The notes under the pieces are model-generated. The model made no database searches, was not told where the DNA came from, and saw only the letters and a list, made by a program, of their open reading frames with translations. From positions 186,001-250,000 of the forward strand of contig OZ251232.1 of the NCBI GenBank assembly GCA_965240325.2: a DNA stretch of 64,000 bases, given 5' to 3'. Below are positions 11,245 through 29,700 of the stretch, one piece after another. Made by a program: the position numbers and the translations under genes. Source of the DNA: Rebecca billardiae RCC1528. Taxonomy: Eukaryota > Protista > Haptophyta. Every line of letters begins with the position of its first letter. Position 1 is the stretch's first letter.

Positions 11245-11557
11245 CTCAGGCCAGCAACGGCCACGGGCAACTGCTTTGTGACCAGTGCCAGGCAGTGCGG
11301 GCCGCCTAGCCGTCGTGCGCGATTGGGCGCTATGTGCAGCGACCTCAGCAAAGGCGCCATCGTCAGCGCCATCGTGGCACAAAACGGTTCAGCTTTGTAA
11401 GCTACCAGGCGGAGATCGCCCAAATCAACCGCCAGATTGAAGGCGGTTTGCGGTCGTTATTAGTCAGCACCGTGCCGTTTCACGCGGGCGGATCTCGCGT
11501 CATCAGCAGCCGGCCCCCCCACTGCTGGACCCAGAGCGCCGCCAAGCCCTGCCAAGC

Positions 11558-12442
11558 ATGCCCACCGCCGAGGAGCGCCGCGCCGAGAAGGAGCGCCAGG
11601 AAGCTGAGATTCGCAAGAAGAATGCGATGATGCAGAAAACGCTCAAGCACACGGGCTCGCGCTCGGACATGGGCCTGTCGCCCGAGGTGGAGCAGGCGCG
11701 CAAGATGGTCGCCGAGCAGTCCAACCGCGAGAAGGAGATGCGCGAGGCGCAGCTGCGCATGCAGAACAAGGAGATGCAGGAGCGGGTGAAGAGCTCGACG
11801 GGGCGCGACGAGAAGGCGCTTGATCCCGAGGTCGAGCGCCAGCGCTCGCTCAACGCCAAGCAGGCCGAGCGGCAGAAGTCGGCGACCAAGGAGGACTTGG
11901 CCAAGCACGCGGCGGCGCTCGCCGAGCGCGTCGCGTCGACTGGGATCCGCTCGGATGTGGCGCTCACGCCCGAGGTGGAGGAGGCGCGGAGGAAGGCCGC
12001 CGAGGAGCGCGCGCGGCAGAAGGCCGCGCAGGAGGCCGAGATGCGCAAACGGAACAAAGACTTCTCCGAGAAGCTTGCGTCCACGCCCGCAAAGGATGCA
12101 AAGTCGTTGCCGCCTGAGACCGAGGCGGCGCGGCAGAGGGCGGCGGAGGACGCGCTGAGGCAGAAGGAGGAGCGCGAGGCGCGGCTGCGCGAGCAGAACA
12201 AGGAGCTGTACACCAAGGTCAAGTCGACCACCGGCCGCGACGAGAAGGGCCTTACGCCGGACGTGGAGGAGGCGCGTGCCAAGGCGGCCGCGGACCGCAA
12301 GCGCGAGGAGGAGGAGAGGAAGCGCGCGCTGGCCGAGCACAAGGCGACGCTTGAGGAGAAGGTGAAGAACACGCCGATGCGCACCGAGGTCAAGCTCGCC
12401 GACGAGACCGAGGAGCGACGCAAGCGCCTCGGCCTCGCCTGA
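11558..12442 (+). CDS. 294-aa charged helical protein with six 48-aa repeats, unknown function
   Basis: Strong host codon bias (AAG/GAG, GC3); repeat core [LI]RxxNxx[MLF]xx[KR][VL]x[ST][ST]xxRxxxxLxP[ED][VT]E. Confidence 0.85.
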   Translation: MPTAEERRAEKERQEAEIRKKNAMMQKTLKHTGSRSDMGLSPEVEQARKMVAEQSNREKEMREAQLRMQNKEMQERVKSSTGRDEKALDPEVERQRSLNAKQAERQKSATKEDLAKHAAALAERVASTGIRSDVALTPEVEEARRKAAEERARQKAAQEAEMRKRNKDFSEKLASTPAKDAKSLPPETEAARQRAAEDALRQKEEREARLREQNKELYTKVKSTTGRDEKGLTPDVEEARAKAAADRKREEEERKRALAEHKATLEEKVKNTPMRTEVKLADETEERRKRLGLA

Positions 12443-12987
12443 CACATCGCGCACGCGTGCCCAGCTCTGGGCCTCGGCCGCGGCGGCGGCAGCAGCCGGG
12501 TGACGCCGCCGCCAGTAGTAGCTTATTGTGTCGCCGCCCCGGCCGTCGTCAACGCCCGGCGGAGCCGGAGACGGCCGCATCGGCATCACCCTTCGGAAAC
12601 CACACGCAGCTGTCAGCGCTAACAGCAGTCTTGCCAGGCGCAAGGCTGGGCCCGCCCAGCGCGGCAGGCCGCAGGCGGCGCGTCGCCGCACCACGGACCG
12701 CCACCGCTCACGGCTCAGACGCAGTTGCGCGCGGCCGCGGGCTAGCGGGCTGCGCCGGGGGCACTGGTGACTGGGGCCCGTCCCGACGGCGGGAGCGCCG
12801 CTATGGCATCCTGCATGAGGCTGATGACGTATTGATGACGGAGTCTGATCCGGCCGCCGACTCTGACGGATGCGTAGAGAGCGTCATACTGCTTCTATAT
12901 ATAATATATATATAGCTCTATATATTAATTATGTAATGAGACATATATTATTATTATATAATGATATAAGCTGATATATATGATTAT

Positions 12988-19302: not shown

Positions 19303-19464
19303 AACCAACCACCACTTACAGTACAGTTTATTTGTTTTAACGTGCGTAAGGCTCACGGTGGCAGTACAGTACCCCCATCAAGTCCATCACGGCAAGCTAG
19401 CAGCGAGCGATGGTGGGATGGCGGCCGTCAGCATGGTCGCCGCCGTCGCAATGATTGCGACGCA

Positions 19465-20409
19465 ATGCCCGTCGCAATGACCGCCGCCGCCGTCGCAATG
19501 GTGGCGACCATGCTGATTGCTTCCGCTATCGACGGTGCCCACCGGCACGGCGTCGGCACCCCTGCACAAAAGGATGGCTTTGCACGCGCGCGCGATCTGC
19601 TCGCGTCTATCGAGTGCACTCAGGCCATCGGAGCGATGCTCAACAACACGCCGTGGACGAACGGCACGGCAGGGCGCGCGATGACGACGATCCTGCACGC
19701 TCCGAATCTGCGCCTGGTGTACGTGCGGAACCCGAAGGCAGCGTCGAGCTCGGTGGTCCAAGTGCTGCGCCACCTGGATCCTGACGCAAACCAGCGCAGG
19801 GAGCGATGGGTAGATTACGCATGGAGGAAGCAGTGGAGGGCAAGAGCGCCACCGAAGGCCACCTTCTACTTCACATTTGTGCGCGAGCCGATCGCTTCCT
19901 TCCTCAGCGCCTATCGCGAGGTGAGCTTGCGATGGCTCAAGCTTCGCACGAATCGACCGACCGTGACGCGCGGGCCGGGCGCGTCCGAGGCCTATGGGCT
20001 GGACTGCGCGCGCTCGCCCACACAACGGCTGGCTGCGTTCGTGCGCGATGTTGTGAGCTTCAACGACCTTGGCTACCAGGCCTACCACGCGTGGCCGCAG
20101 ACGGTCAAGATCTTCGTGCGCGCGCCGGCCGGGCGTCCGACACTCGACTTTGTCGGCAGGGTCGAGCACTTTGCCGACGACTTGCTCGAGCTGCTCGCGA
20201 GCGTCGGCGTCACGAACGCCACACGCGCTGAGCTGGACGAGATCCGGCAGAACGCAGACAAGGCCCACAAGAGCAGGTGCACAGCCGCCGACCGCGAGGC
20301 GACGGAGCATGTCGACTCGCGCACGCGCGCGGCGATCGCGGCGTATGTGCACGCGGACTGCGTGTGCTTGGCGCCGTCGTACGGTGGCTGCAGAGCGGAC
20401 ATGGGCTGA
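19465..20409 (+). CDS. Sulfotransferase family 2 (carbohydrate sulfotransferase-like)
   Basis: N-terminal hydrophobic anchor; LVYVRNPKAASSSV; FTFVREPIASFLSAY; LDFVGRVEHFADDL. Confidence 0.85.
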   Translation: MPVAMTAAAVAMVATMLIASAIDGAHRHGVGTPAQKDGFARARDLLASIECTQAIGAMLNNTPWTNGTAGRAMTTILHAPNLRLVYVRNPKAASSSVVQVLRHLDPDANQRRERWVDYAWRKQWRARAPPKATFYFTFVREPIASFLSAYREVSLRWLKLRTNRPTVTRGPGASEAYGLDCARSPTQRLAAFVRDVVSFNDLGYQAYHAWPQTVKIFVRAPAGRPTLDFVGRVEHFADDLLELLASVGVTNATRAELDEIRQNADKAHKSRCTAADREATEHVDSRTRAAIAAYVHADCVCLAPSYGGCRADMG

Positions 20410-20960: not shown

Positions 20961-23066
20961 ATGCATCCCGCACCGCGGCGGCCGTGCCTGCTGCTGTGCG
21001 CCGCGGTGGCGTGCTGCGCGATGCGCACCGCGCCACTGCCGGCAGCGTCGGGTGCGCGGAGCGCCCGCTCGCCTGCACGAGCCGCCGTGGCGCGCACCAG
21101 CGTCCGCCTCACCGCGCCGACGCAGACGTCAGGCGGCAGCAGCGGCGGCGCTAACGCCGCGAGCAGCGAGCGTGCACGAGAGGGGAGCACAGCGGGCGCG
21201 TACAAGCTGGGCATCATGCTGCTCGGCCAGGGCGCGCCCGAGTCCAGCGTCGACCTGGAGTCCTACCTGCAGAACATCTTCGAGGACCCGGAGGTGGTGA
21301 CGGTGCCCGACAGCCTGCCGTGGGCCAAGCGGCCGCTCGCGTGGGCGATCGCACGGCAGTCGGCGCGCGGGCTGAAGAAGACGACCGAAGGCCTCCTCGA
21401 CGCCGTCTCCGTCTCGGAGTCCGCCCAGCTCCAGATCGTGCGCGACCAGGCCTCCGCGCTCGAGGCGGCGCTCAGGCGACGCGAGGTGAGCGCGCAGACG
21501 TTTGTGGCGATGCGCTACTGGACGCCGTACATCGCAGACGCGGTCGAGGAGATCAAAGCGGCGGGCGTGACGCACCTGCTCATCCTGCCGCTCTTCCCGC
21601 AGTTCTCGCTCGCGACCAGTGGCTCCAGCCTGCGCGTCCTCGAGGACACGCTCGACAGCGACGTCGGCTTCTCCGCGATCAAGAACGTGGTGATCCCGTC
21701 GTGGTACAAGCAGCCTGCATACGTGAACGCGGTCGCGCAGGGCGTGGTGAGGGCGGTCGAGCGGCTGGGCGGCGGCGGCGGCGAGGGCGAGGGGCAGGGT
21801 GCGCCGGCGGGCGAGCAGGCCGCCAGCTCGCCGCGGCCGCGGCGCGGCCCGTTCGCGCGCCTCTTCGGGCGCGGCGGCGGCAGCGGCGGGTCGCGGCAGG
21901 CGCAGCGCGCGGGCCCTCGGCTGCCCACGCTGCGCAAGCCGGCGGCGAGTGCTCCGCCCACCATCCTCTTCTCCTGCGTCTCGCTGCCCGAGAAGTACGT
22001 CACCGACCTGGGCGACCCGTACATCGAGCAGATCGAGCTGACCGTCAGCCTGGTGATGGCGCGCGTGCAGGAGCTCAGCGGCAGTGCGCTGCCGCACAGC
22101 ATCGCCTACCAGGGTGCGCGCCCGTTGCGCGCGCGGCGCGCGGCTCGCGCGCGCGCGGAGGCCGCGGGGCGCGCGCGGCGGCCGCCGGGGGGTGCCCGGC
22201 CTGCTCCGCGCGCGCGCGCGTTGTCAGCCGCTCAGCGCCGTGCGCGCGCGCGCGGCGGCGGCGGCGGCGTGCGCCCGCAGGCCAGCTCGCCGAGCCGTCC
22301 GTGCCCAACCGCATCCGCTGGGTCGGCCCCAACGTCGAGGACGAGATCACGAGGCTGGGCGGTGCGGGCGTGCGCGCGCTGGTGGTGGTGCCGCTCTCCT
22401 TCCTCTTCGAGCAGAGGGGCACGCTGTACATGCAGGTGGGCGCCCGGCGCGGCGCGCGGCGCGCGGCCTCGCGGGGCGCCACGCCCGCGCCGCGCGCTCT
22501 GCACACCCCGCGCCCACCCGCCCCCCTTCCCCCTGCCTCCCCCGCTGTGCGTGCTTGCACCCTGCTCTTGCACCCTGCTCTTGCACCCTGCTCTTGCACC
22601 CTGCTTGCAGGACAAGGTGTACCGCGAGCTGGCCGCCCAGAACGGCATCAGCGAGTACGAGCGAGCGCCCACGCTCGGCGCGGACGCGGAGCTGATCGAG
22701 GCGCTCGCGGGCGCGGTCGAGGGCGCGCTGCCCTCGCTGCTCGAGACCAAGAACCCGCTGGAGAACGCGGTGGACATGGGGATCCCGATGCACCTCACGA
22801 TCGTGAACGACCTGCTACAGATCCAGCAGAAGGGGGAGGGCATGCGGCTGGTGCCGCAGGAGCAGCCGTGGGGCATCAAGGACCCCGGGCAGGCCGAGCT
22901 GGTCAACGGGCGCGTCGCGATGGCGGCCCTGGTCGTGATGGTCTCGCAGGGGCTGATCGTCGACTCCTTCTTCCCCAACCTCTGGCGGGAACTGCTCGAG
23001 GGCACGCTCGCATTCCTCTCCGCGCTCACGGCGGGCGGTGGGGACGGCCCTGGCGCGGGCGTGTAG
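20961..23066 (+). CDS. Plastid ferrochelatase-like protein (FC2/HemH type) with C-terminal CAB helix and substituted catalytic residues; exons 20961-22113, 22281-22435, 22611-23066
   Basis: Bipartite leader; AMRYWTPY, LPLFPQFSLATSGSS, IPSWY, GDPY, AYQ; CAB motif AELVNGRVAM. Two GT-AG introns give a continuous frame. Confidence 0.88.
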   Translation: MHPAPRRPCLLLCAAVACCAMRTAPLPAASGARSARSPARAAVARTSVRLTAPTQTSGGSSGGANAASSERAREGSTAGAYKLGIMLLGQGAPESSVDLESYLQNIFEDPEVVTVPDSLPWAKRPLAWAIARQSARGLKKTTEGLLDAVSVSESAQLQIVRDQASALEAALRRREVSAQTFVAMRYWTPYIADAVEEIKAAGVTHLLILPLFPQFSLATSGSSLRVLEDTLDSDVGFSAIKNVVIPSWYKQPAYVNAVAQGVVRAVERLGGGGGEGEGQGAPAGEQAASSPRPRRGPFARLFGRGGGSGGSRQAQRAGPRLPTLRKPAASAPPTILFSCVSLPEKYVTDLGDPYIEQIELTVSLVMARVQELSGSALPHSIAYQGARPLRARRAARARAEAAGRARRPPGGARPAPRARALSAAQRRARARGGGGGVRPQASSPSRPCPTASAGSAPTSRTRSRGWAVRACARWWWCRSPSSSSRGARCTCRWAPGAARGARPRGAPRPRRALCTPRAHPPPFPLPPPLCVLAPCSCTLLLHPALAPCLQDKVYRELAAQNGISEYERAPTLGADAELIEALAGAVEGALPSLLETKNPLENAVDMGIPMHLTIVNDLLQIQQKGEGMRLVPQEQPWGIKDPGQAELVNGRVAMAALVVMVSQGLIVDSFFPNLWRELLEGTLAFLSALTAGGGDGPGAGV

Positions 23067-23737
23067 CCGCGCGCGCGGCGCGACACGCGTGGGCCGATCT
23101 ATCATGGCGGCGATGGCTGGCGGACCATAGGGGCTCGGCTCGCGCTCGGCCGAACCGCATCAGGCTCGGCGTGGGCAGAATGCCAGTAGAAGGCGCCGCG
23201 GCCGTGCGCGGCCGCGGTGGCACACGTCACCGCGTGACGTGACCACTGGCCAGTCACTGGGCACCAGATCAGCAGCACGGCGTCGGCATATACTGGGTCA
23301 CACGTATAGTATAGCTAGTGAAAGCTACCAGCAAGTATTATACGACTGTCACTTATTAGTGAATTTAATAAGACTTATTTATATTACCAGCAGCACTGAC
23401 GACGCACGCTGGATGACGACACTCAGAGTCGTAGCAGTAGTACTATATATATATATACTGATGACGATGCCGCGCCACTACTCGTCTCGACACTCGTCTC
23501 AATATAATGCATGTCAGCGCATATATGTCGTCGTGACGAGGTCCCGCCCAGGCGCCCAATCACTGCCGCGTGCGACCCGCCATCATCAGACATTGATCAG
23601 TGACGGACTCAGAGACAGCGACTCGGCGACTCGCCGGCCGCATTCGACAGCAGACAAGCCCGCGCGGCGGAGTACACGCAGCGCGCAACGCGCGGGCATG
23701 GCCGCCCGCTCGCGCACCGCCCTCCGCCCTCCCGCGC

Positions 23738-26700
23738 TCAGATCTGCGCGATGGCTGCCCGGATCGCCGAGTCGATCTCGCCGTCGCCACCCGTGTACGC
23801 GGGCTGCTGCCTGCGGCCGCGGTCGGCGTTCACCGCGTCCGCCATCAGCGCCTCCTTCGCCGCGTCGGCCTCGCGGAAGATGGCGCTGACCTCGTGCGGC
23901 GCGAGCGACTGCGTGACGTTCTTGTTCATGCTCAGCTCGAGCACAAAGTCGCGCACCTGCGTGTGTGCGCGCGGCGCGCGCGCGCGCTCAGCCGTGCGGC
24001 CGGGGCGGCGAGCCGAGGGCTCGCGCGCGCGGCTGCGCGCACCTTCTCGCGCTCGTCGTCGGGGAGGTATTCCCTGTCGGGGAGCTCGAACTCGAAGGGG
24101 ATCTCCGTGTCCGCAAAGTCCGAGTTGTCCAGCCCCGTGTGGCTGTCCCCCTCCTCGATCGCCTCGGTGATGTCGAGGTAGCTGCGCACGCGGCGCGCAT
24201 CGGCGCGGCGCGGATGGGCGGATGCGCGCGGCGCGCGTGAGCGCTCGGGCGCGCGCGCGCGGCGCGGCGGTGGCGGCGGCGCGTCGCGCGGCATCGGCGC
24301 GCACCGGTTGAGGAAGACGAACGCGAAGTCGAGCTTGTTCGCCCCCTTCGCCGCCATCCCCGCCTCGTAGAACGCCTTGTCCGCGGGCATGTCAGCGACG
24401 TACTTGAGCGCGCACACGGCCAGCTTGGCCGCGGAGAGCTTCAGCCCGCGCTGGTTGGCGATGGCCTTGGCGGCGAGGATGGTGGAGACCCACATCACGC
24501 GCTCGAACTCGTCCACCACCGCCGGCGCCTCGCCCGCCGTCTTGAGCGCGCCGATCACCTTGACGAGCATCGAGCGCAGCTCCTTGAGCTCGGCGCGCGC
24601 GTCCGCCTGCGCCGCGCTCTGCGGCTGCTCGGCGAGCAGCTGCGTGTACAGCCTGCGGTACAGCGCGACGTGCGAGGGCTTGGAGACGTCGGTGCCGTAC
24701 TGGCCGAAGATCTTGGCCGCGCCGACGAAGTCGCCCGCGTTGATCAGCACCGAGCCGTGCAGCGTCGCGTACTTGAGCAGCATCGCCGGCCCCTGCGACT
24801 GCGCGACCTCGAGCGCCTTGCGCCAGTCCCCGCGCTGCGCGTACACGTCGATGCCCTCGGACGCGTTGCCCGACATCACGAGCTCGTCGCCGTCCTGCGC
24901 GCCGCGGAGGAACTCGACGTGGCGGCTCTGCACCATCTGCGCGTACTGCGGCGCCTGCGAGCGCGTCAGCGCCTTCGCCTGCTCCCACAGCCCCCCGGCC
25001 ATGTACACCTCGAGCGCCTCCGCGTAGTTGTCGATGCCTTCGTACAGCTCTGCGGCCTGCGCGTGCCGCCCGATCTCGATCAGCCGCTTGGCGACGGTGG
25101 CGACGACCTCGGAGATGCGGTCGGAGACGTGGTTCATCGCGATCTTCACCGCGTTCTCCCACACCTCCTCCAGGTAGTCGTGCGAGCTCGAGTGCGCGCT
25201 GCTCACCTTGAGGTACGCGTCGATGGCGCGCGAGAAATCGCGGCCCTCCTCGAGCGCGCGCGCGGCGGCGACGAGCGACTCGGCGCCGCCGCCGCCGCCG
25301 CCGCCGCGGCCGCCGTCGGCGGCGGCGCCGGCGGCGGGCGCGGGGACGCTCACGCCGTTCTGGAAGTTGGTGTACTCCGTGTTGATCTCGCCCAGCTTGT
25401 GCGGCAGGAACTCCTTCGTCAGCCGGATCGCGTCCTGCCAGCGCCCCGCCTCCTTGAAGGCCTTGACCGCCGCCTCGGGCTTCTTGGCGCGCACGTACAG
25501 CGCCTCGGCGCGCGTGAAGTCGCCGCGCTCGATGGCGAGCTTGGCCTGCGCGACGAGGATGTCGCCGACGGAGGACGGGTCGTTCGCCTCCGCCACGCGC
25601 ATCGCCGCCTGCCAGTCCTGCTGGTGGATGTACATGTCGATCGCCTCCTTGGGCTTGTCCGCCTTGACAAACTCCGCCTCCGCCTCGGCAAACCGCCCCT
25701 CGTCCTCGAGGAACATGGCGTACTTGAGGTGCACCTCGGGCAGCTTCTCCTTCTTCGAGGCGCGCGCGAGCGAGAACGCGTGGTCGAACGCGCCCGACTC
25801 CGTCGCGTAGTCGATCGCCTGCTCGATCAGCCCGAACTTGGTGAGCAGCTTGGCGCCCGCCTCGCCGCCGAGCGAGACCGCCCACGCGTACGCGACCTGC
25901 TTCGACGCGGCCAGCCCGCCGTGCTCCTTCGCCACGCGGATCGCGTCGTCCCACAGGTCGTTCGCGCGGTACATGTTGATCGCCGACTTCCAGTCCGACG
26001 CGTGCACGTAGTGCTTCTCCGCCTGCGCCGAGCGCGCGCGCGCGTTCGCGCACACGTGGCGCGTGGGCGCGCAGGGCGAGCGCGCAAGGGACGGCGCGCG
26101 CGCGCGCGCGCGCGCGCGCCGCGCGCCCCACCGCGCCCCGCCCCGCCGCGCCCCGCCCCGCCGCGCCCCGCCCGCCCGCGCCCGCCCCCTCCGCGCGCGC
26201 ACCTGCTTGAAGTTGCCCTCCGTCTCGAGCTGCTGCGCGAGGTGCAGGTGCGTCTCGCCGAGCAGCTCCTTCCTGAACGCGGAGACGAGCCGGATCATGT
26301 CGTCGTACTTGTGCGCCTTCTTGTACATGTTGATCGCCAGGTCGGGCTCCTGCACGTAGAGGTAGAGCTTCTCGGCCTCCTTGTGCTTCCCGCCCGCCTC
26401 GAGCTCGTGCGCCGCCTTCATGTACAGCATCGCCACCTCCGACTGCTGCATGTGCTCGCTCGCCACCTTGCTCGCGCGCTCGAGCCGGCCGGCGGTGAGG
26501 TGCATCTTGACGGCGTCGTGCGGCGCGTGCCCGCGCAGGTAGTACGTCTCGGCCTCCTCGTACGCGTGCGTGGTCTCGTAGTGCTTGGCGATGCGCGCGT
26601 AGTACGGCGCCGCCTGCGCGTCCTCGAGCGTCGTCACCACCTGCACCGCCTTCGCCCACTGCCGCGAGGAGATGGCCGCCTCGACCGCCTTCACGTATGC

Positions 26701-29700
26701 GCCCGCCTCCACGTAGTGGTTGACCGCCGCGTCCGTCTGCTTGCTGCCCACCAGGTAGTCGCCCCACGCCTGCTCGAGCTCGACGACGCCGCGGCCCTGG
26801 TACACGCGGCGGCACAGCTCCACCGCGGCCGAGAAGATGTTCCCCTTCTTGTAGCAGTCGAGCGCGCGCTCGTGCTCGCCCAGCCGCTCGTAGAAGCCGC
26901 CCGCCTTCTCGAACATGCCCGACTGGAAGAGCGCCTGCGCGGTCGTCTCGAGCACCTGCTTCGAGACCTCGCCCTGCTCGGCGAGCTGGAGCACGAGGCG
27001 GGCGGCCTTGGCGGGCAGCTTGCCCGAGATGTACAGGTTGATCGCGCCCGCGTAGTCGTGCTCGCGCTCCTTGTGCTGCGCGGCCACCTCCTCCTGGTGC
27101 GTGTCGAGCAGCCAGTTGTAGTAGTTCTCCTTGAGCTGCGCGACCGCCGGGTGGTGGTTCGCCTCGCCCACGGCGATCGACTCGTCGTACTTGTGCAGCT
27201 CGTTCCACATCTGCGCCCGCGCGCCCGCGCGCAGGCCGCCGCCGCGGGGAGGGGAGGCGCGCGGCGCGTCGAGCGGCGGCGGCGGCGCGGCGCTCGGCGA
27301 GGGCGCGCGCCGCGCGCACCTCCATCGCCTCCTCGACCTGGCCGTGCTGCAGCAGCAGCAGCTCGGCCTTCTTGAACTGCTTGTTCAGCACGGCGAGCTT
27401 CGCCTGCACGCGGAAGTGCGTGAGCGCCACCTGCCCCGTCTCCGCCTCGATCTCCGCCATCATGTTGACAATCTTGTGCAGGTAGCGCGCCTTGGCCGCG
27501 TCGCCGACCGCCGCGTAGCACCGCTCGGCGACCTGCAGCTCCTCGGCGGCGAGCGCGGCCTCGGAGAGCTGGCCCCACATCGCCTGCGTCTCGGGCGTCA
27601 TCTCGAGCCGCTCCAGCGTCTCCGCCGCGATCTCGAGCTCGCCCGAGTCGAGCGCCGCGCCGAAGGCGATCAGCGCCTCGTCGAGCGCGTACGACACGGT
27701 GTTGATGCCCTCGTCCACGATCACCTCCGTCTTGCCGTCGGCGCGCTCGATCTCCTCGACGTCGCCCTTGATCGGCACGACGGTGACCTTGTCGGGCGAG
27801 TTGATGTGGTACCACACGCACAGCGAGCCGCGGTTCTGCGCCACCACCACGTCCGCGTTCGGCACCCAGTTGACGTACGACGCGTACGAGAGCAGCGTGC
27901 TGCGCGACTGCCGCTCGATGTCGTACAGGTGCAGCTGCCGCCGCTTGTCGCGGAAGAGGAGCTTGGTGGCGTTGAGCGAGAGGTCGAGCCAGTCGATGCG
28001 CGCGTCGTGCGAGATCGTCGCCGCGCTGATCCCCGAGTCGAGGTCGAGCACGCGGATCGTCTGCAGGTCGATCAGGTAGGCGATCTTCTTGATCTCCTCG
28101 CCGTGCGCCTCCACGCCCTGCGCGGCCGCCTGCGCGACCGCGCCGCGGTGCAGCGGCATCGTCTTGATCTTGACCGAGAGCTGGTGCGGGTTCATGTGGT
28201 CCGTGCGGCACGAGCCGAGCACCTCGTTCCGCCCGTACTCCACCAGCGTGAGCTCGCCCAGGTTGCACACGACGCACACGCGCTCGTTGTCGAAGTGGAA
28301 CTTCTCCTGGCCGGACGACTGCCACGGCACCTCGGAGAGCTTGCACGTGTCGAGGTCGCCCATCAGCAGCGTCTCGGGCGTGTGCGCGATCAGGAAGCGG
28401 TCCTCGTAGATGTTGATCTTCGTCACCTCGTACCCGAAGTGCGACTTGAGCACGATGCGCGCACCGGTCGAGAGCCGCTTCACGATCACGGTCGAGATGG
28501 ACACGTACGTGAACTCAAACTTGCCGCGGTAGCGGTAGCGGTGGATGCACGCGTCGTACAGCTCGACGCCGCCGCAGAGCGAGCCGACGCACAGCCGCGA
28601 GCCGTCCGCCTTCCACCCGAGCGCCGTCACCGTGTACATGTTGTCCACCTGCTTGACGGACACCTGCTCCCACGCGGACGCGCGCGCGTTGTGGCTGAAC
28701 GTGTAGAAGCGGTTGAACGAGCCGACGACGACGGCCTCCCCCGACGGGTTGAACGCCGCGACGGTGAACTCCTTCTCCGCCTCGTCCGTCGAGTAGTCGA
28801 AGTGCTGCGCGCGCCGGTGCGGGCCACGGCACGCGCGCGCGGCGGGCGCGCATGCGCGGGCGTGCGCGCTCGGTCAGCGACTCGGCCCGCGCGGCACCGC
28901 ACATGCCGCCGCAGCGCCCGCGCCCGCGCGCGCGCCGGGCCCACGCACACGCAGGCACGCGCGGGCACGCGCGCGCGCGCGCGCCCGGGAGAGCGAGGGG
29001 CGGGCGCGTGGCGGGCGCGCGGCCGCTCGCACCTGCAGCACCACGCCCTCCGTGTCGTAGAAGACGACCTTCAGGTCGTTGCCCGCGCAGCAGATGGCCT
29101 CGCCCCACGCGAGGGCGTACGGCACAGAGGTGTGCTGGCACACCAGCGAGTGCATCGCGCCGCGCCCGTTCTCGTCGAAGATGAAGCGGTAGACCGTGCC
29201 GTCCAGGTGGCCCGACAGCACGCCGTTGCCGTCCATCTTCGCGCAGCAGCTCACGACGTACGAGTCGGTGGCGTAGAGCGTGAGCGGCTTGTTCGAGCGG
29301 AGCTGGCCGATCTTCACCTTGCCCTCCGCCAGGCCGAACACCACCTCGTGCGGGTGCTCGCTCGGCCAGCACATGCACGTGATCGACGACTGCTGGTGGA
29401 ATTTGTTGCAGATCGACTTCTTGTCGCCCCACTCGAGGCCGAGCTTGTAGACGAAGACGATGTTGTCCGACTGCGCGACGGCGAGCTTGGCAGAGTCGGG
29501 CGACCACGCCATCCCGCGCACCATGTAGTTCTTCGCCCCCTTCGCATCCGCTGGCTTTGTCGAGAACTTGTCGCGCCGCTCGCCGTTCTCGTCAAACAGG
29601 TGCACGACGCGGTCGGTCGTCACCACGGCGATGCGCCGGTTATTGGGCGACCAGCAGATCGACGTGACCTTGGCGATCCCATCCTGCGGCGGGTGGATCG

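What the first reader, a model, noticed from the sequence alone, without database searches (positions are those of the whole stretch)
20961..23066. Intact 'dead' ferrochelatase retaining a chlorophyll-binding CAB helix: candidate tetrapyrrole sensor/scaffold
Seen: the gene is complete, with a bipartite plastid leader, two clean introns and no stops, and the structural ferrochelatase motifs are conserved. The active-site motifs are specifically replaced: FSAHG(V/L)P reads FSCVSLP (codon GTC at 21978-21980), SEHIETLEEID reads FEQRGTLYMQD (22409 onward), NLGGPE reads GQGAPE, GGSP is absent and AYQSR reads AYQGQ. The C-terminal CAB motif ExxNGRxAM (AELVNGRVAM, ~22893-22922) is intact. Established: the His of SAH and the Glu of ETL are invariant catalytic residues of protoporphyrin ferrochelatases, and the CAB helix of cyanobacterial/plant FC2 binds pigment and mediates dimerisation. 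Inference: this is a maintained pseudoenzyme paralogue. It could heterodimerise with active ferrochelatase or bind porphyrin/chlorophyll to steer the heme-chlorophyll branch point, a regulatory module I do not know to be described.
Basis: partly seen in the sequence, partly recalled or inferred. Interest (0 to 1): 0.8.

Follow-up and report, generated by a model that had tools for sequence, protein, structure and literature searches.

The report
Conserved inactive ferrochelatase copy in haptophytes
This alga keeps an intact, membrane-anchored copy of the haem-making enzyme ferrochelatase that has lost its catalytic residues, and the same kind of copy is conserved across haptophyte algae including Emiliania huxleyi, so it most likely does a non-enzymatic job that I found no paper describing.

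Summary
Window 20961-23066 (+) is a three-exon, 587-aa gene with the ferrochelatase (FC) fold and a C-terminal chlorophyll-binding (CAB) helix. The catalytic His263 (human numbering) is Val. The pi-helix His341, Glu343 and Glu347 are Gln, Gly and Met. Propionate ligands Arg115 and Tyr123 and the GGxSP loop are also gone.

It is not a lone oddity. Orthologues with the same substitutions occur in Diacronema lutheri and a third pavlovophyte. A sister group (His to Gln, Glu343 to Ala/Gly) occurs in prymnesiophytes, including E. huxleyi, where it is transcribed. A careful tree puts all of these in one clade (99/96), sister to the canonical haptophyte FCs (94/87). The duplication therefore predates the split of the two haptophyte classes.

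The core is under purifying selection, while the presequence and a low-complexity insert are not. I read it as a maintained pseudoenzyme, probably a thylakoid-anchored scaffold or regulator acting through its CAB helix. Classical porphyrin binding is doubtful for this pavlovophyte form.

Not shown: expression in this organism, a canonical FC in this same genome, and any binding or interaction. One environmental lineage fuses the family to a Rieske domain. I found no paper on the clade. The scan's earlier notes returned nothing on it.

The parts
20961..23066 (+). Whole FC-like gene, start codon to TAG; 587-aa product
   Evidence: It is the only FC-like copy in the window.
20961..21197 (+). Presequence, residues 1-79: signal-peptide-like hydrophobic stretch (residues 9-27) followed by an Ala/Ser/Arg/Thr-rich, transit-peptide-like stretch
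   Evidence: Hydropathy and composition. Fast-evolving: NG86 omega 0.85. Plastid targeting is inferred, not predicted by a tool.
21198..21788 (+). Ferrochelatase N-lobe, residues 80-276. Includes GQGAPE (21225-21242, in place of NLGGPE) and the degenerate GGxSP region (21387-21425)
   Evidence: Pfam PF00762. Alignments to human FECH. Column table: Arg115 to Ser, Tyr123 to Thr, GGxSP to VSESA.
21789..21956 (+). Low-complexity Gly/Ala/Arg/Pro insert, residues 277-332, in the loop before the His motif
   Evidence: Variable in length and sequence among the three pavlovophyte copies. Omega about 1.5. Low pLDDT in the Diacronema model. Could hide an unrecognised intron; unresolved.
21963..21992 (+). 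ILFSCVSLPE, the counterpart of xxFSAHGxPx. Val340 (GTC, 21978-21980) replaces catalytic His263
22114..22280 (+). Intron 1 (167 nt, GT-AG), splitting codon Gly385 of AYQGQ
   Evidence: Absent at this site in Diacronema and in L001.
22400..22435 (+). Degenerate pi-helix FLFEQRGTLYMQ(D): His341 to Gln, Glu343 to Gly, Glu347 to Met; Phe337 kept
22436..22610 (+). Intron 2 (175 nt, GT-AG), ending in a perfect 4 x 13-nt tandem repeat at 22554-22605
22848..22874 (+). LVPQEQPWG linker motif. Shared by all members of the His-less clade and absent from canonical FCs
   Evidence: clade-specific shared residues 516-520; sequences
22893..22970 (+). CAB (chlorophyll-binding) helix AELVNGRVAMAALVVMVSQGLIVDSF. 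Glu, Asn and Arg of the ExxNGRxAM motif are intact
   Evidence: Most hydrophobic 19-mer of the protein. Weak Pfam Chloroa_b-bind. Same motif in canonical haptophyte FCs. Modelled as a helix in the orthologue.

Best explanation
The gene encodes a plastid-directed member of a haptophyte-specific clade of ferrochelatase-derived pseudoenzymes. The clade arose when the CAB-bearing plastid ferrochelatase duplicated before Pavlovophyceae and Prymnesiophyceae split.

Shown:
- The ferrochelatase fold and the CAB helix are kept.
- The catalytic His is replaced in every member: Val in pavlovophytes, Gln in prymnesiophytes.
- The pi-helix Glu is replaced in both groups (one long-branch Met-type relative of unknown taxon, P0062, keeps it).
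- This pavlovophyte branch additionally lost His341, Glu347, Arg115, Tyr123 and the GGxSP loop.
- The core evolves under purifying selection.

Inferred:
- It cannot insert iron by the known mechanism.
- It survives because it does a non-catalytic job at the thylakoid membrane.
- The most likely mechanism is that its CAB helix pairs with the near-identical helix of the active ferrochelatase or of one-helix LHC-like proteins. The globular ex-enzyme domain would then scaffold or regulate tetrapyrrole-pathway complexes, by analogy with the non-catalytic role of plant FC2 in the POR-FLU-GluTR complex.

Porphyrin binding in the old pocket is plausible for the Gln-type relatives and doubtful for this protein.
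For: - Gene model and motifs.
- Mapping to human His263, His341 and Glu343.
- Orthologues with identical substitutions in Diacronema lutheri (P0001) and a third pavlovophyte (L001; P0002 and P0161).
- Gln-type clade including E. huxleyi P0236 and MMETSP transcripts.
- Careful IQ-TREE tree: His-less clade 99/96; window + Diacronema + Gln-type 96/86; sister to canonical haptophyte FCs 94/87.
- The AU test rejects a pavlovophyte-only origin, p 0.0094.
- The canonical paralogue, with SAHGLP, SEHIETLEEID and a CAB helix, is present in Pavlovales sp. CCMP2436, Prymnesium, Calcidiscus and Scyphosphaera.
- NG86 omega is 0.39-0.42 in the core against 0.85 (presequence) and 1.5 (insert). With codon frequencies modelled, dS is saturated and core omega is far below 1.
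- The three pavlovophyte genomes have introns at different places yet all keep the frame.
- AlphaFold2 model of the orthologue: core pLDDT above 90. Foldseek best hits are human, yeast and bacterial ferrochelatases, TM by target 0.77-0.88.
- All His263 variants studied are inactive, and E343K is inactive yet binds protoporphyrin (PMC9133952).
- FC2 has a scaffold role through its CAB anchor (bioRxiv 10.1101/2022.10.12.511875).
Against: - No RNA run could be listed for this locus, so expression in this organism is not shown.
- A canonical FC in this same genome was not found or searched for. Only this 64-kb window is available, and it has one copy.
- No binding, interaction or localisation data exist.
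- dS is saturated and GC3 is 0.94, so the omega values are rough.
- Losses are only marginally enriched in named active-site residues (p about 0.05).
- The Gln-type relatives keep 41 of 47 near-invariant FC columns, and one lineage fuses them to a Rieske domain. That fits a changed catalytic activity at least as well as a purely structural role.
Confidence: 0.6

Rival explanations
1. It is still an enzyme, with a changed reaction: another metal or tetrapyrrole substrate, dechelation, or a redox step served by a partner. A different residue would act as the base.
For: The pocket is strongly conserved in the Gln-type relatives: 41 of 47 invariant columns, with Arg115, Ser130, His341 and Phe337 kept. 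An in-frame fusion of the Gln-type to a Rieske [2Fe-2S] domain occurs in an environmental haptophyte lineage, in a 70-member cluster. A Gln-bearing 'ferrochelatase' is the copy reported for the colourless green alga Polytomella parva.
Against: All tested His263 variants are inactive (PMC9133952). The window protein has lost not only His263 but also His341, Glu343, Glu347, Arg115, Tyr123 and the GGxSP loop, leaving little of any known chelatase chemistry. The long stem branch of 1.26 suggests released pocket constraint in pavlovophytes.
Confidence: 0.15
2. It is a decaying duplicate, a young pseudogene in all but name, with no function in this organism.
For: No transcript evidence for the pavlovophyte form. 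The branch is very long and motif loss is extensive. Weerth et al. treated His-less FC copies as dysfunctional duplicates (PMC8529089).
Against: The 587-codon frame is open with valid splice sites. The same substitutions and the same CAB and linker motifs are kept in three pavlovophyte genomes whose introns have moved. The core is constrained relative to the presequence and the insert within the same gene. The clade predates the split of the two haptophyte classes.
Confidence: 0.07
3. It is mainly a pigment-binding, LHC-like photoprotective protein. Only the CAB helix matters and the ex-enzyme domain is a passive stromal appendage.
For: The ExxNGRxAM motif is intact in a hydrophobic helix. The CAB domain of cyanobacterial FC binds chlorophyll and carotenoid (Pazdernik et al. 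2019, cited in PMC8529089).
Against: The N- and C-lobes of the FC domain are as conserved as the CAB segment: 68-70% against 67% identity, with omega 0.39-0.40 against 0.41-0.42. A passive appendage would not be held like that.
Confidence: 0.1

Closest known systems
Ferrochelatase II / cyanobacterial-type plastid ferrochelatase with a C-terminal CAB (LHC-motif) helix, such as Synechocystis HemH, Arabidopsis FC2 and canonical haptophyte FCs
   Same: Same fold (TM 0.77-0.88 to solved FCs), same domain order, same linker plus ExxNGRxAM helix. It nests inside the plastid/cyanobacterial FC clade as sister to the canonical haptophyte FCs.
   Different: Catalytic His263, His341, Glu343, Glu347, Arg115, Tyr123 and the GGxSP loop are replaced. 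It has clade-specific YQG and LVPQE motifs, a long low-complexity insert and a very long branch.
Nematode ferrochelatase-like protein (C. elegans pseudoferrochelatase; Nagayasu et al. 2013 as cited in PMC9133952)
   Same: A ferrochelatase homologue that lacks the catalytic His and is regarded as non-functional as an enzyme.
   Different: Independent origin: animal lineage against plastid lineage. It has no CAB helix and no plastid targeting. Orthology was not tested here and is not expected.
His-less 'dysfunctional duplicate' ferrochelatases set aside in the survey of Weerth et al. 2021 (PMC8529089)
   Same: Second FC copies lacking the catalytic His in organisms that also have an active FC.
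   Different: Those were excluded from that survey without analysis. No haptophyte name appears in its text or its held supplements. Here the copies form an old, conserved, CAB-bearing clade.
Non-catalytic scaffold role of plant FC2 in the POR-FLU-GluTR complex (bioRxiv 10.1101/2022.10.12.511875)
   Same: A thylakoid-anchored FC protein acts through protein contacts on the chlorophyll branch. This is the functional model proposed here.
   Different: Plant FC2 is also an active enzyme. No interaction data exist for the haptophyte protein.

Membership tests
Protoporphyrin ferrochelatase (HemH, Pfam PF00762) as an active enzyme | Class II chelatase two-lobe fold / PF00762 match | tested here: met
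   Pfam 1.9e-44 on exon 1, with further matches on exons 2 and 3. The orthologue model matches FC structures, TM by target 0.77-0.88.
Protoporphyrin ferrochelatase (HemH, Pfam PF00762) as an active enzyme | Invariant catalytic His (human His263) | tested here: not met
   Val340 (GTC, 21978-21980) aligns with His263. His is present in all 113 canonical sequences compared.
Protoporphyrin ferrochelatase (HemH, Pfam PF00762) as an active enzyme | Pi-helix hydrogen-bond network His341 / Glu343 (and Glu347) | tested here: not met
   Gln429, Gly431 and Met435.
Protoporphyrin ferrochelatase (HemH, Pfam PF00762) as an active enzyme | Propionate ligands Arg115, Tyr123 and Ser130 in the GGxSP loop | tested here: not met
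   Arg to Ser134, Tyr to Thr142, GGxSP to VSESA. A Ser may persist, but the alignment of this loop is uncertain by a few residues.
Protoporphyrin ferrochelatase (HemH, Pfam PF00762) as an active enzyme | Fe2+ insertion into protoporphyrin IX | not testable with these tools
   Needs hemH complementation or an in vitro assay.
Ferrochelatase II subgroup of the extended LHC superfamily | C-terminal chlorophyll-binding motif ExxNGRxAM within a hydrophobic helix | tested here: met
   AELVNGRVAMAALVVMVSQGLIV is the most hydrophobic segment. Pfam Chloroa_b-bind is only weak, 19.4 bits against a 22.3 cut-off.
Ferrochelatase II subgroup of the extended LHC superfamily | Descent from the cyanobacterial/plastid FC lineage | tested here: met
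   It lies inside the plastid/cyanobacterial clade, sister to canonical haptophyte FCs, 94/87.
Ferrochelatase II subgroup of the extended LHC superfamily | Plastid targeting | tested here: inconclusive
   Hydrophobic N-terminus followed by a hydroxylated/basic stretch. No predictor or localisation data.
Haptophyte His-less FC-like clade (defined in this report) | Placement in the clade, plus the shared YQG, Tyr102 and LVPQE motifs | tested here: met
   Clade support 99/96. AU test against a separate pavlovophyte origin, p 0.0094. Shared motifs.
Nematode ferrochelatase-like (FECL) pseudoenzymes | Common descent with the nematode His-less copy | not tested
   No nematode sequence was included. 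The plastid-lineage placement makes independent origin the expectation.

The most novel reading that the evidence does not exclude
Haptophytes, from pavlovophytes to bloom-forming prymnesiophytes such as E. huxleyi, carry an old, dedicated, thylakoid-anchored ex-ferrochelatase. It acts as a regulatory or sensing subunit at the haem/chlorophyll branch point. Alternatively, in its Gln-type and Rieske-fused forms, it has acquired new tetrapyrrole chemistry. Either way it would be a pathway component with no described counterpart in plants, diatoms or cyanobacteria.
Probability: 0.3. Interest if true: 0.8.

Novelty: new variant of a known kind. Interest (0 to 1): 0.6.

Why it matters
How flux is divided between haem and chlorophyll is a central, incompletely solved control problem in phototrophs, and almost all of the knowledge comes from plants and cyanobacteria. 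Haptophytes are major marine primary producers.

A conserved second FC2-type protein that cannot make haem yet keeps the membrane anchor gives a concrete, testable candidate for lineage-specific control of that branch point.

It also matters for annotation. These proteins are labelled 'ferrochelatase' in public records (E. huxleyi, Diacronema, UniRef). Pathway reconstructions and metatranscriptome counts of 'hemH' in haptophyte-rich waters therefore mix an enzyme with a non-enzyme.

Tried and rejected
- RNA evidence: the look-up of sequencing runs listed no RNA run, so read laying could not be used. The splice sites rest on comparison only.
- Earlier scan notes held nothing on ferrochelatase or tetrapyrroles in this genome.
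- A canonical FC in Diacronema or in E. huxleyi was not recovered from the lists I could read. Co-occurrence of both paralogues in one genome is therefore inferred from the tree, not shown.
- YN00 dN/dS failed because synonymous sites are saturated. ML values are unstable (dS 4-43) and are used only qualitatively.
- Atlas look-alikes gave only generic ferrochelatase clusters.
- Synteny: the SIR2 gene next to the orthologue in L001 has only a partial match 8 kb away in the window. The neighbours here, a sulfotransferase and an IFT172-like gene, are unrelated.
- I considered that the low-complexity insert starts at the GTGAGG at about 21748 as an intron. I rejected that donor because the residues after it (VRAVERL) are conserved with Diacronema. 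An intron deeper in the insert is not excluded.
- I considered that Polytomella's Gln-bearing FC belongs to the clade. The careful tree places it with green algae, so it is an independent case.
- The spliced window protein has no reference, so the orthologue P0001 was folded instead of it.
Full report
**Observation.**
The region is a very GC-rich (69%) eukaryotic gene. A model with exons 20961-22113, 22281-22435 and 22611-23066 and two GT-AG introns gives 1764 nt in frame and a 587-aa product. Exon 2 is in the homologous frame only after splicing. The 720-aa mechanical ORF reads it in the wrong frame. Both junctions are confirmed by comparison. The Diacronema lutheri orthologue and a third pavlovophyte contig code straight across them, and have introns elsewhere: after residues 196 and 394 in Diacronema, and after SLPEK in L001.

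Pfam finds Ferrochelatase on all three exons (1.9e-44 on exon 1). It finds a sub-threshold Chloroa_b-bind match on exon 3.

- ILFSCVSLPE, with Val340 = GTC at 21978-21980
- FLFEQRGTLYMQD
- GQGAPE
- AYQGQ
- no GGSP
- AELVNGRVAM at 22893-22922

HMMER alignments to human ferrochelatase put Val340 on His263 and Gln-Arg-Gly on His341-Ile342-Glu343.

**How degenerate is it?**
I aligned 113 canonical ferrochelatases (bacteria, cyanobacteria, plants, algae) and found 47 near-invariant columns. The window protein keeps 32 of them. The 15 lost include:
- Arg115, Tyr123 and the two Gly and the Pro of GGxSP, all in the porphyrin-propionate site
- Ala262 and His263
- Ser303
- His341, Glu343 and Glu347

Arg164, Trp310, Phe337, the QFSxxTxGSS strand and GDPY are kept. 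Losses are over-represented among the residues that the ferrochelatase review names as active-site residues, but only marginally (5 of 8 against 10 of 39, one-sided Fisher p 0.056).

The review states that every His263 variant studied is inactive, and that E343K is inactive while co-purifying with protoporphyrin (PMC9133952). Loss of chelatase activity is therefore a well-grounded inference, though not a measurement.

**Relatives.**
A word-index search with exon 1 found a 617-aa protein of Diacronema lutheri (KFE25_011250, 70% identity in the conserved parts) and a Logan contig from a third pavlovophyte. Both have the same changes: AAVSLPE or SAVSLPE, FLFEQRGTLY or FLYEQRGTLY, and AELINGRLAMAA.

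Searching with the C-terminal half found a second group at 42-44% identity. It carries SAQGLP (His to Gln), FEHM(A/G)TLNEMD (Glu343 to Ala/Gly, His341 kept), GAPE, YQG and the CAB motif.

A profile search of 1.84 billion representatives returned 9054 ferrochelatases. Among the best 150 hits, 21 had something other than His at the His263 column, with Gln in 15; a few of the 21 are frame-broken or misaligned fragments.

A profile word search gave names. The Gln-type includes 'putative ferrochelatase [Emiliania huxleyi CCMP1516]', and an almost identical MMETSP transcript exists, so it is transcribed. A Chrysotila/Pleurochrysis fragment also belongs.

The same search found canonical haptophyte ferrochelatases in Scyphosphaera, Calcidiscus, Prymnesium parvum and Pavlovales sp. 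CCMP2436. These have SAHGLP, SEHIETLEEID and the same AE(L/V)INGR(I/L)AMAA helix.

**Phylogeny.**
A careful IQ-TREE analysis used 63 sequences, 457 columns and LG+C20+F+G4. It gives:
- the His-less sequences (window, Diacronema, Gln-type and one long-branch Met-type of unknown taxon) as one clade, 99/96
- window + Diacronema as sister to the Gln-type, 96/86
- the canonical haptophyte FCs as a clade, 90/57
- the two clades together, 94/87, inside the plastid/cyanobacterial FC group

Forcing the two pavlovophyte His-less proteins to join the canonical pavlovophyte FC costs 31.8 log-likelihood units (AU p 0.0094). Two caveats apply: the group was named after the tree was seen, and the pavlovophyte stem is long (1.26).

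Clade-specific shared residues support one origin: Tyr102, Lys123, Gly385 in YQG, and LVPQE just before the CAB helix.

The duplication therefore predates the split of Pavlovophyceae and Prymnesiophyceae, and both copies were kept in both classes.

A Gln-bearing 'ferrochelatase' of the colourless green alga Polytomella parva groups with green algae and is an independent case.

**Selection.**
Against Diacronema, NG86 omega is 0.39 (N-lobe), 0.40 (C-lobe) and 0.41-0.42 (linker + CAB). It is 0.85 for the presequence and 1.5 for the low-complexity insert of the same gene. GC3 is 0.94. With codon frequencies modelled, dS saturates and core omega falls far below 1. The numbers are rough, but the contrast within the gene is clear.

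Three genomes with different intron positions all keep the frame. This rules out a recent dead duplicate.

**Structure.**
AlphaFold2 on the Diacronema orthologue, with a 46-sequence alignment, gives pLDDT above 90 for 267 residues of the two lobes. Confidence is low for the presequence and the insert. The CAB segment is modelled as a long helix. Foldseek's best PDB matches are human, yeast and bacterial ferrochelatases (E 1e-22 to 1e-15, TM by target 0.77-0.88). The window's own spliced protein has no reference, so it was not folded.

**Mechanism.**
Shown: an intact, conserved, FC-fold protein with a CAB helix and without the catalytic apparatus.

Inferred:
1. It is imported into the plastid. 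The N-terminus has a hydrophobic stretch and then an Ala/Ser/Arg-rich stretch.
2. It is anchored in the thylakoid by the CAB helix.
3. It works through protein contacts. The CAB helix is nearly identical to that of the active paralogue, so it could pair with that helix or with one-helix LHC-like proteins. The cyanobacterial FC CAB domain is reported to bind chlorophyll and carotenoid (Pazdernik et al. 2019, cited in PMC8529089).

Plant FC2 already has a non-catalytic role stabilising POR and the FLU-GluTR complex (bioRxiv 10.1101/2022.10.12.511875). That is the closest functional model.

It fits this pavlovophyte form less well, because the propionate site is gone.

**A pointer to function from elsewhere.**
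In an abundant environmental haptophyte lineage the Gln-type is fused in one open reading frame to an N-terminal Rieske [2Fe-2S] domain (CPH...CSFH; Pfam Rieske 3.3e-11). This is seen on several metagenomic contigs, with the C-terminal half and the CAB helix in the next exon. That keeps a changed, redox-linked activity for the family on the table.

**Known or new.**
Dead ferrochelatases as such are known. The literature has a nematode pseudoferrochelatase (PMC9133952), and 14 His-less sequences, 11 of them second copies, that a survey discarded as dysfunctional (PMC8529089). That survey does not name haptophytes in its text or its held supplements.

Papers on algal tetrapyrrole pathway evolution, on diatom haem enzymes and on the extended LHC superfamily do not mention this clade. 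Five other full-text searches found nothing.

I therefore rate it a new variant of a known kind: a conserved CAB-bearing pseudo-ferrochelatase clade of haptophytes, currently annotated as plain 'ferrochelatase'.

**Limits.**
- No transcript evidence for this locus.
- No canonical FC shown in this same genome. The window holds one copy only.
- No biochemical data.
- The extent of coding sequence in the 277-332 insert is unresolved.
- The taxon is inferred as a pavlovophyte from the nearest relatives. GC content differs from Diacronema, CCMP2436 and the Logan contig.

Noticed in passing
L003:6001-8103 and L004:1246-3351 (JGI metagenome contigs): In an environmental haptophyte lineage the Gln-type FC-like gene is fused in one ORF to an N-terminal Rieske [2Fe-2S] domain (CPH...CSFH; Pfam Rieske 3.3e-11). 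The C-terminal half and the CAB helix lie in the next exon. The cluster has 70 member sequences. Engelken et al. 2010 list a separate 'Rieske-like CAB protein' family.
   Followed up: partly
P0086 / P0220 (Polytomella parva QKY14909.1, off-window): The protein annotated as ferrochelatase in this colourless green alga has Gln for the catalytic His, ENVNT for EHIET and no CAB motif. It groups with green-algal FCs, so it is an independent loss. Whether Polytomella has another FC was not checked.
   Followed up: partly
P0062 (Logan contig, off-window): A long-branch relative of the His-less clade has Met at the His263 position but keeps His341 and Glu343 and the CAB motif. Its taxon is unknown.
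   Followed up: no
window 22554-22605: A perfect four-copy 13-nt tandem repeat (CTTGCACCCTGCT) fills the 3' end of intron 2, ending five bases before the acceptor AG.
   Followed up: no
window 22114-22280 and 22436-22610; L002:10589-10771 and 11366-11578; L001:2341-2640: The three pavlovophyte copies of this gene share no intron position, which points to rapid intron turnover in this group.
   Followed up: partly
window 19342-20409 (+) and 23932-28663 (-): The flanking genes are a Sulfotransfer_2-family ORF upstream and an IFT172/IFT140-like TPR/beta-propeller gene downstream on the other strand. The gap between the gene ends (23100-23700) drops to 57-59% GC.
   Followed up: partly
window 12691-12861 (+): A short stretch is 79% identical at protein level to the SIR2-family gene that lies head-to-head with the FC-like gene in the third pavlovophyte (L001:101-1228). 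This may be a remnant of shared gene order.
   Followed up: no
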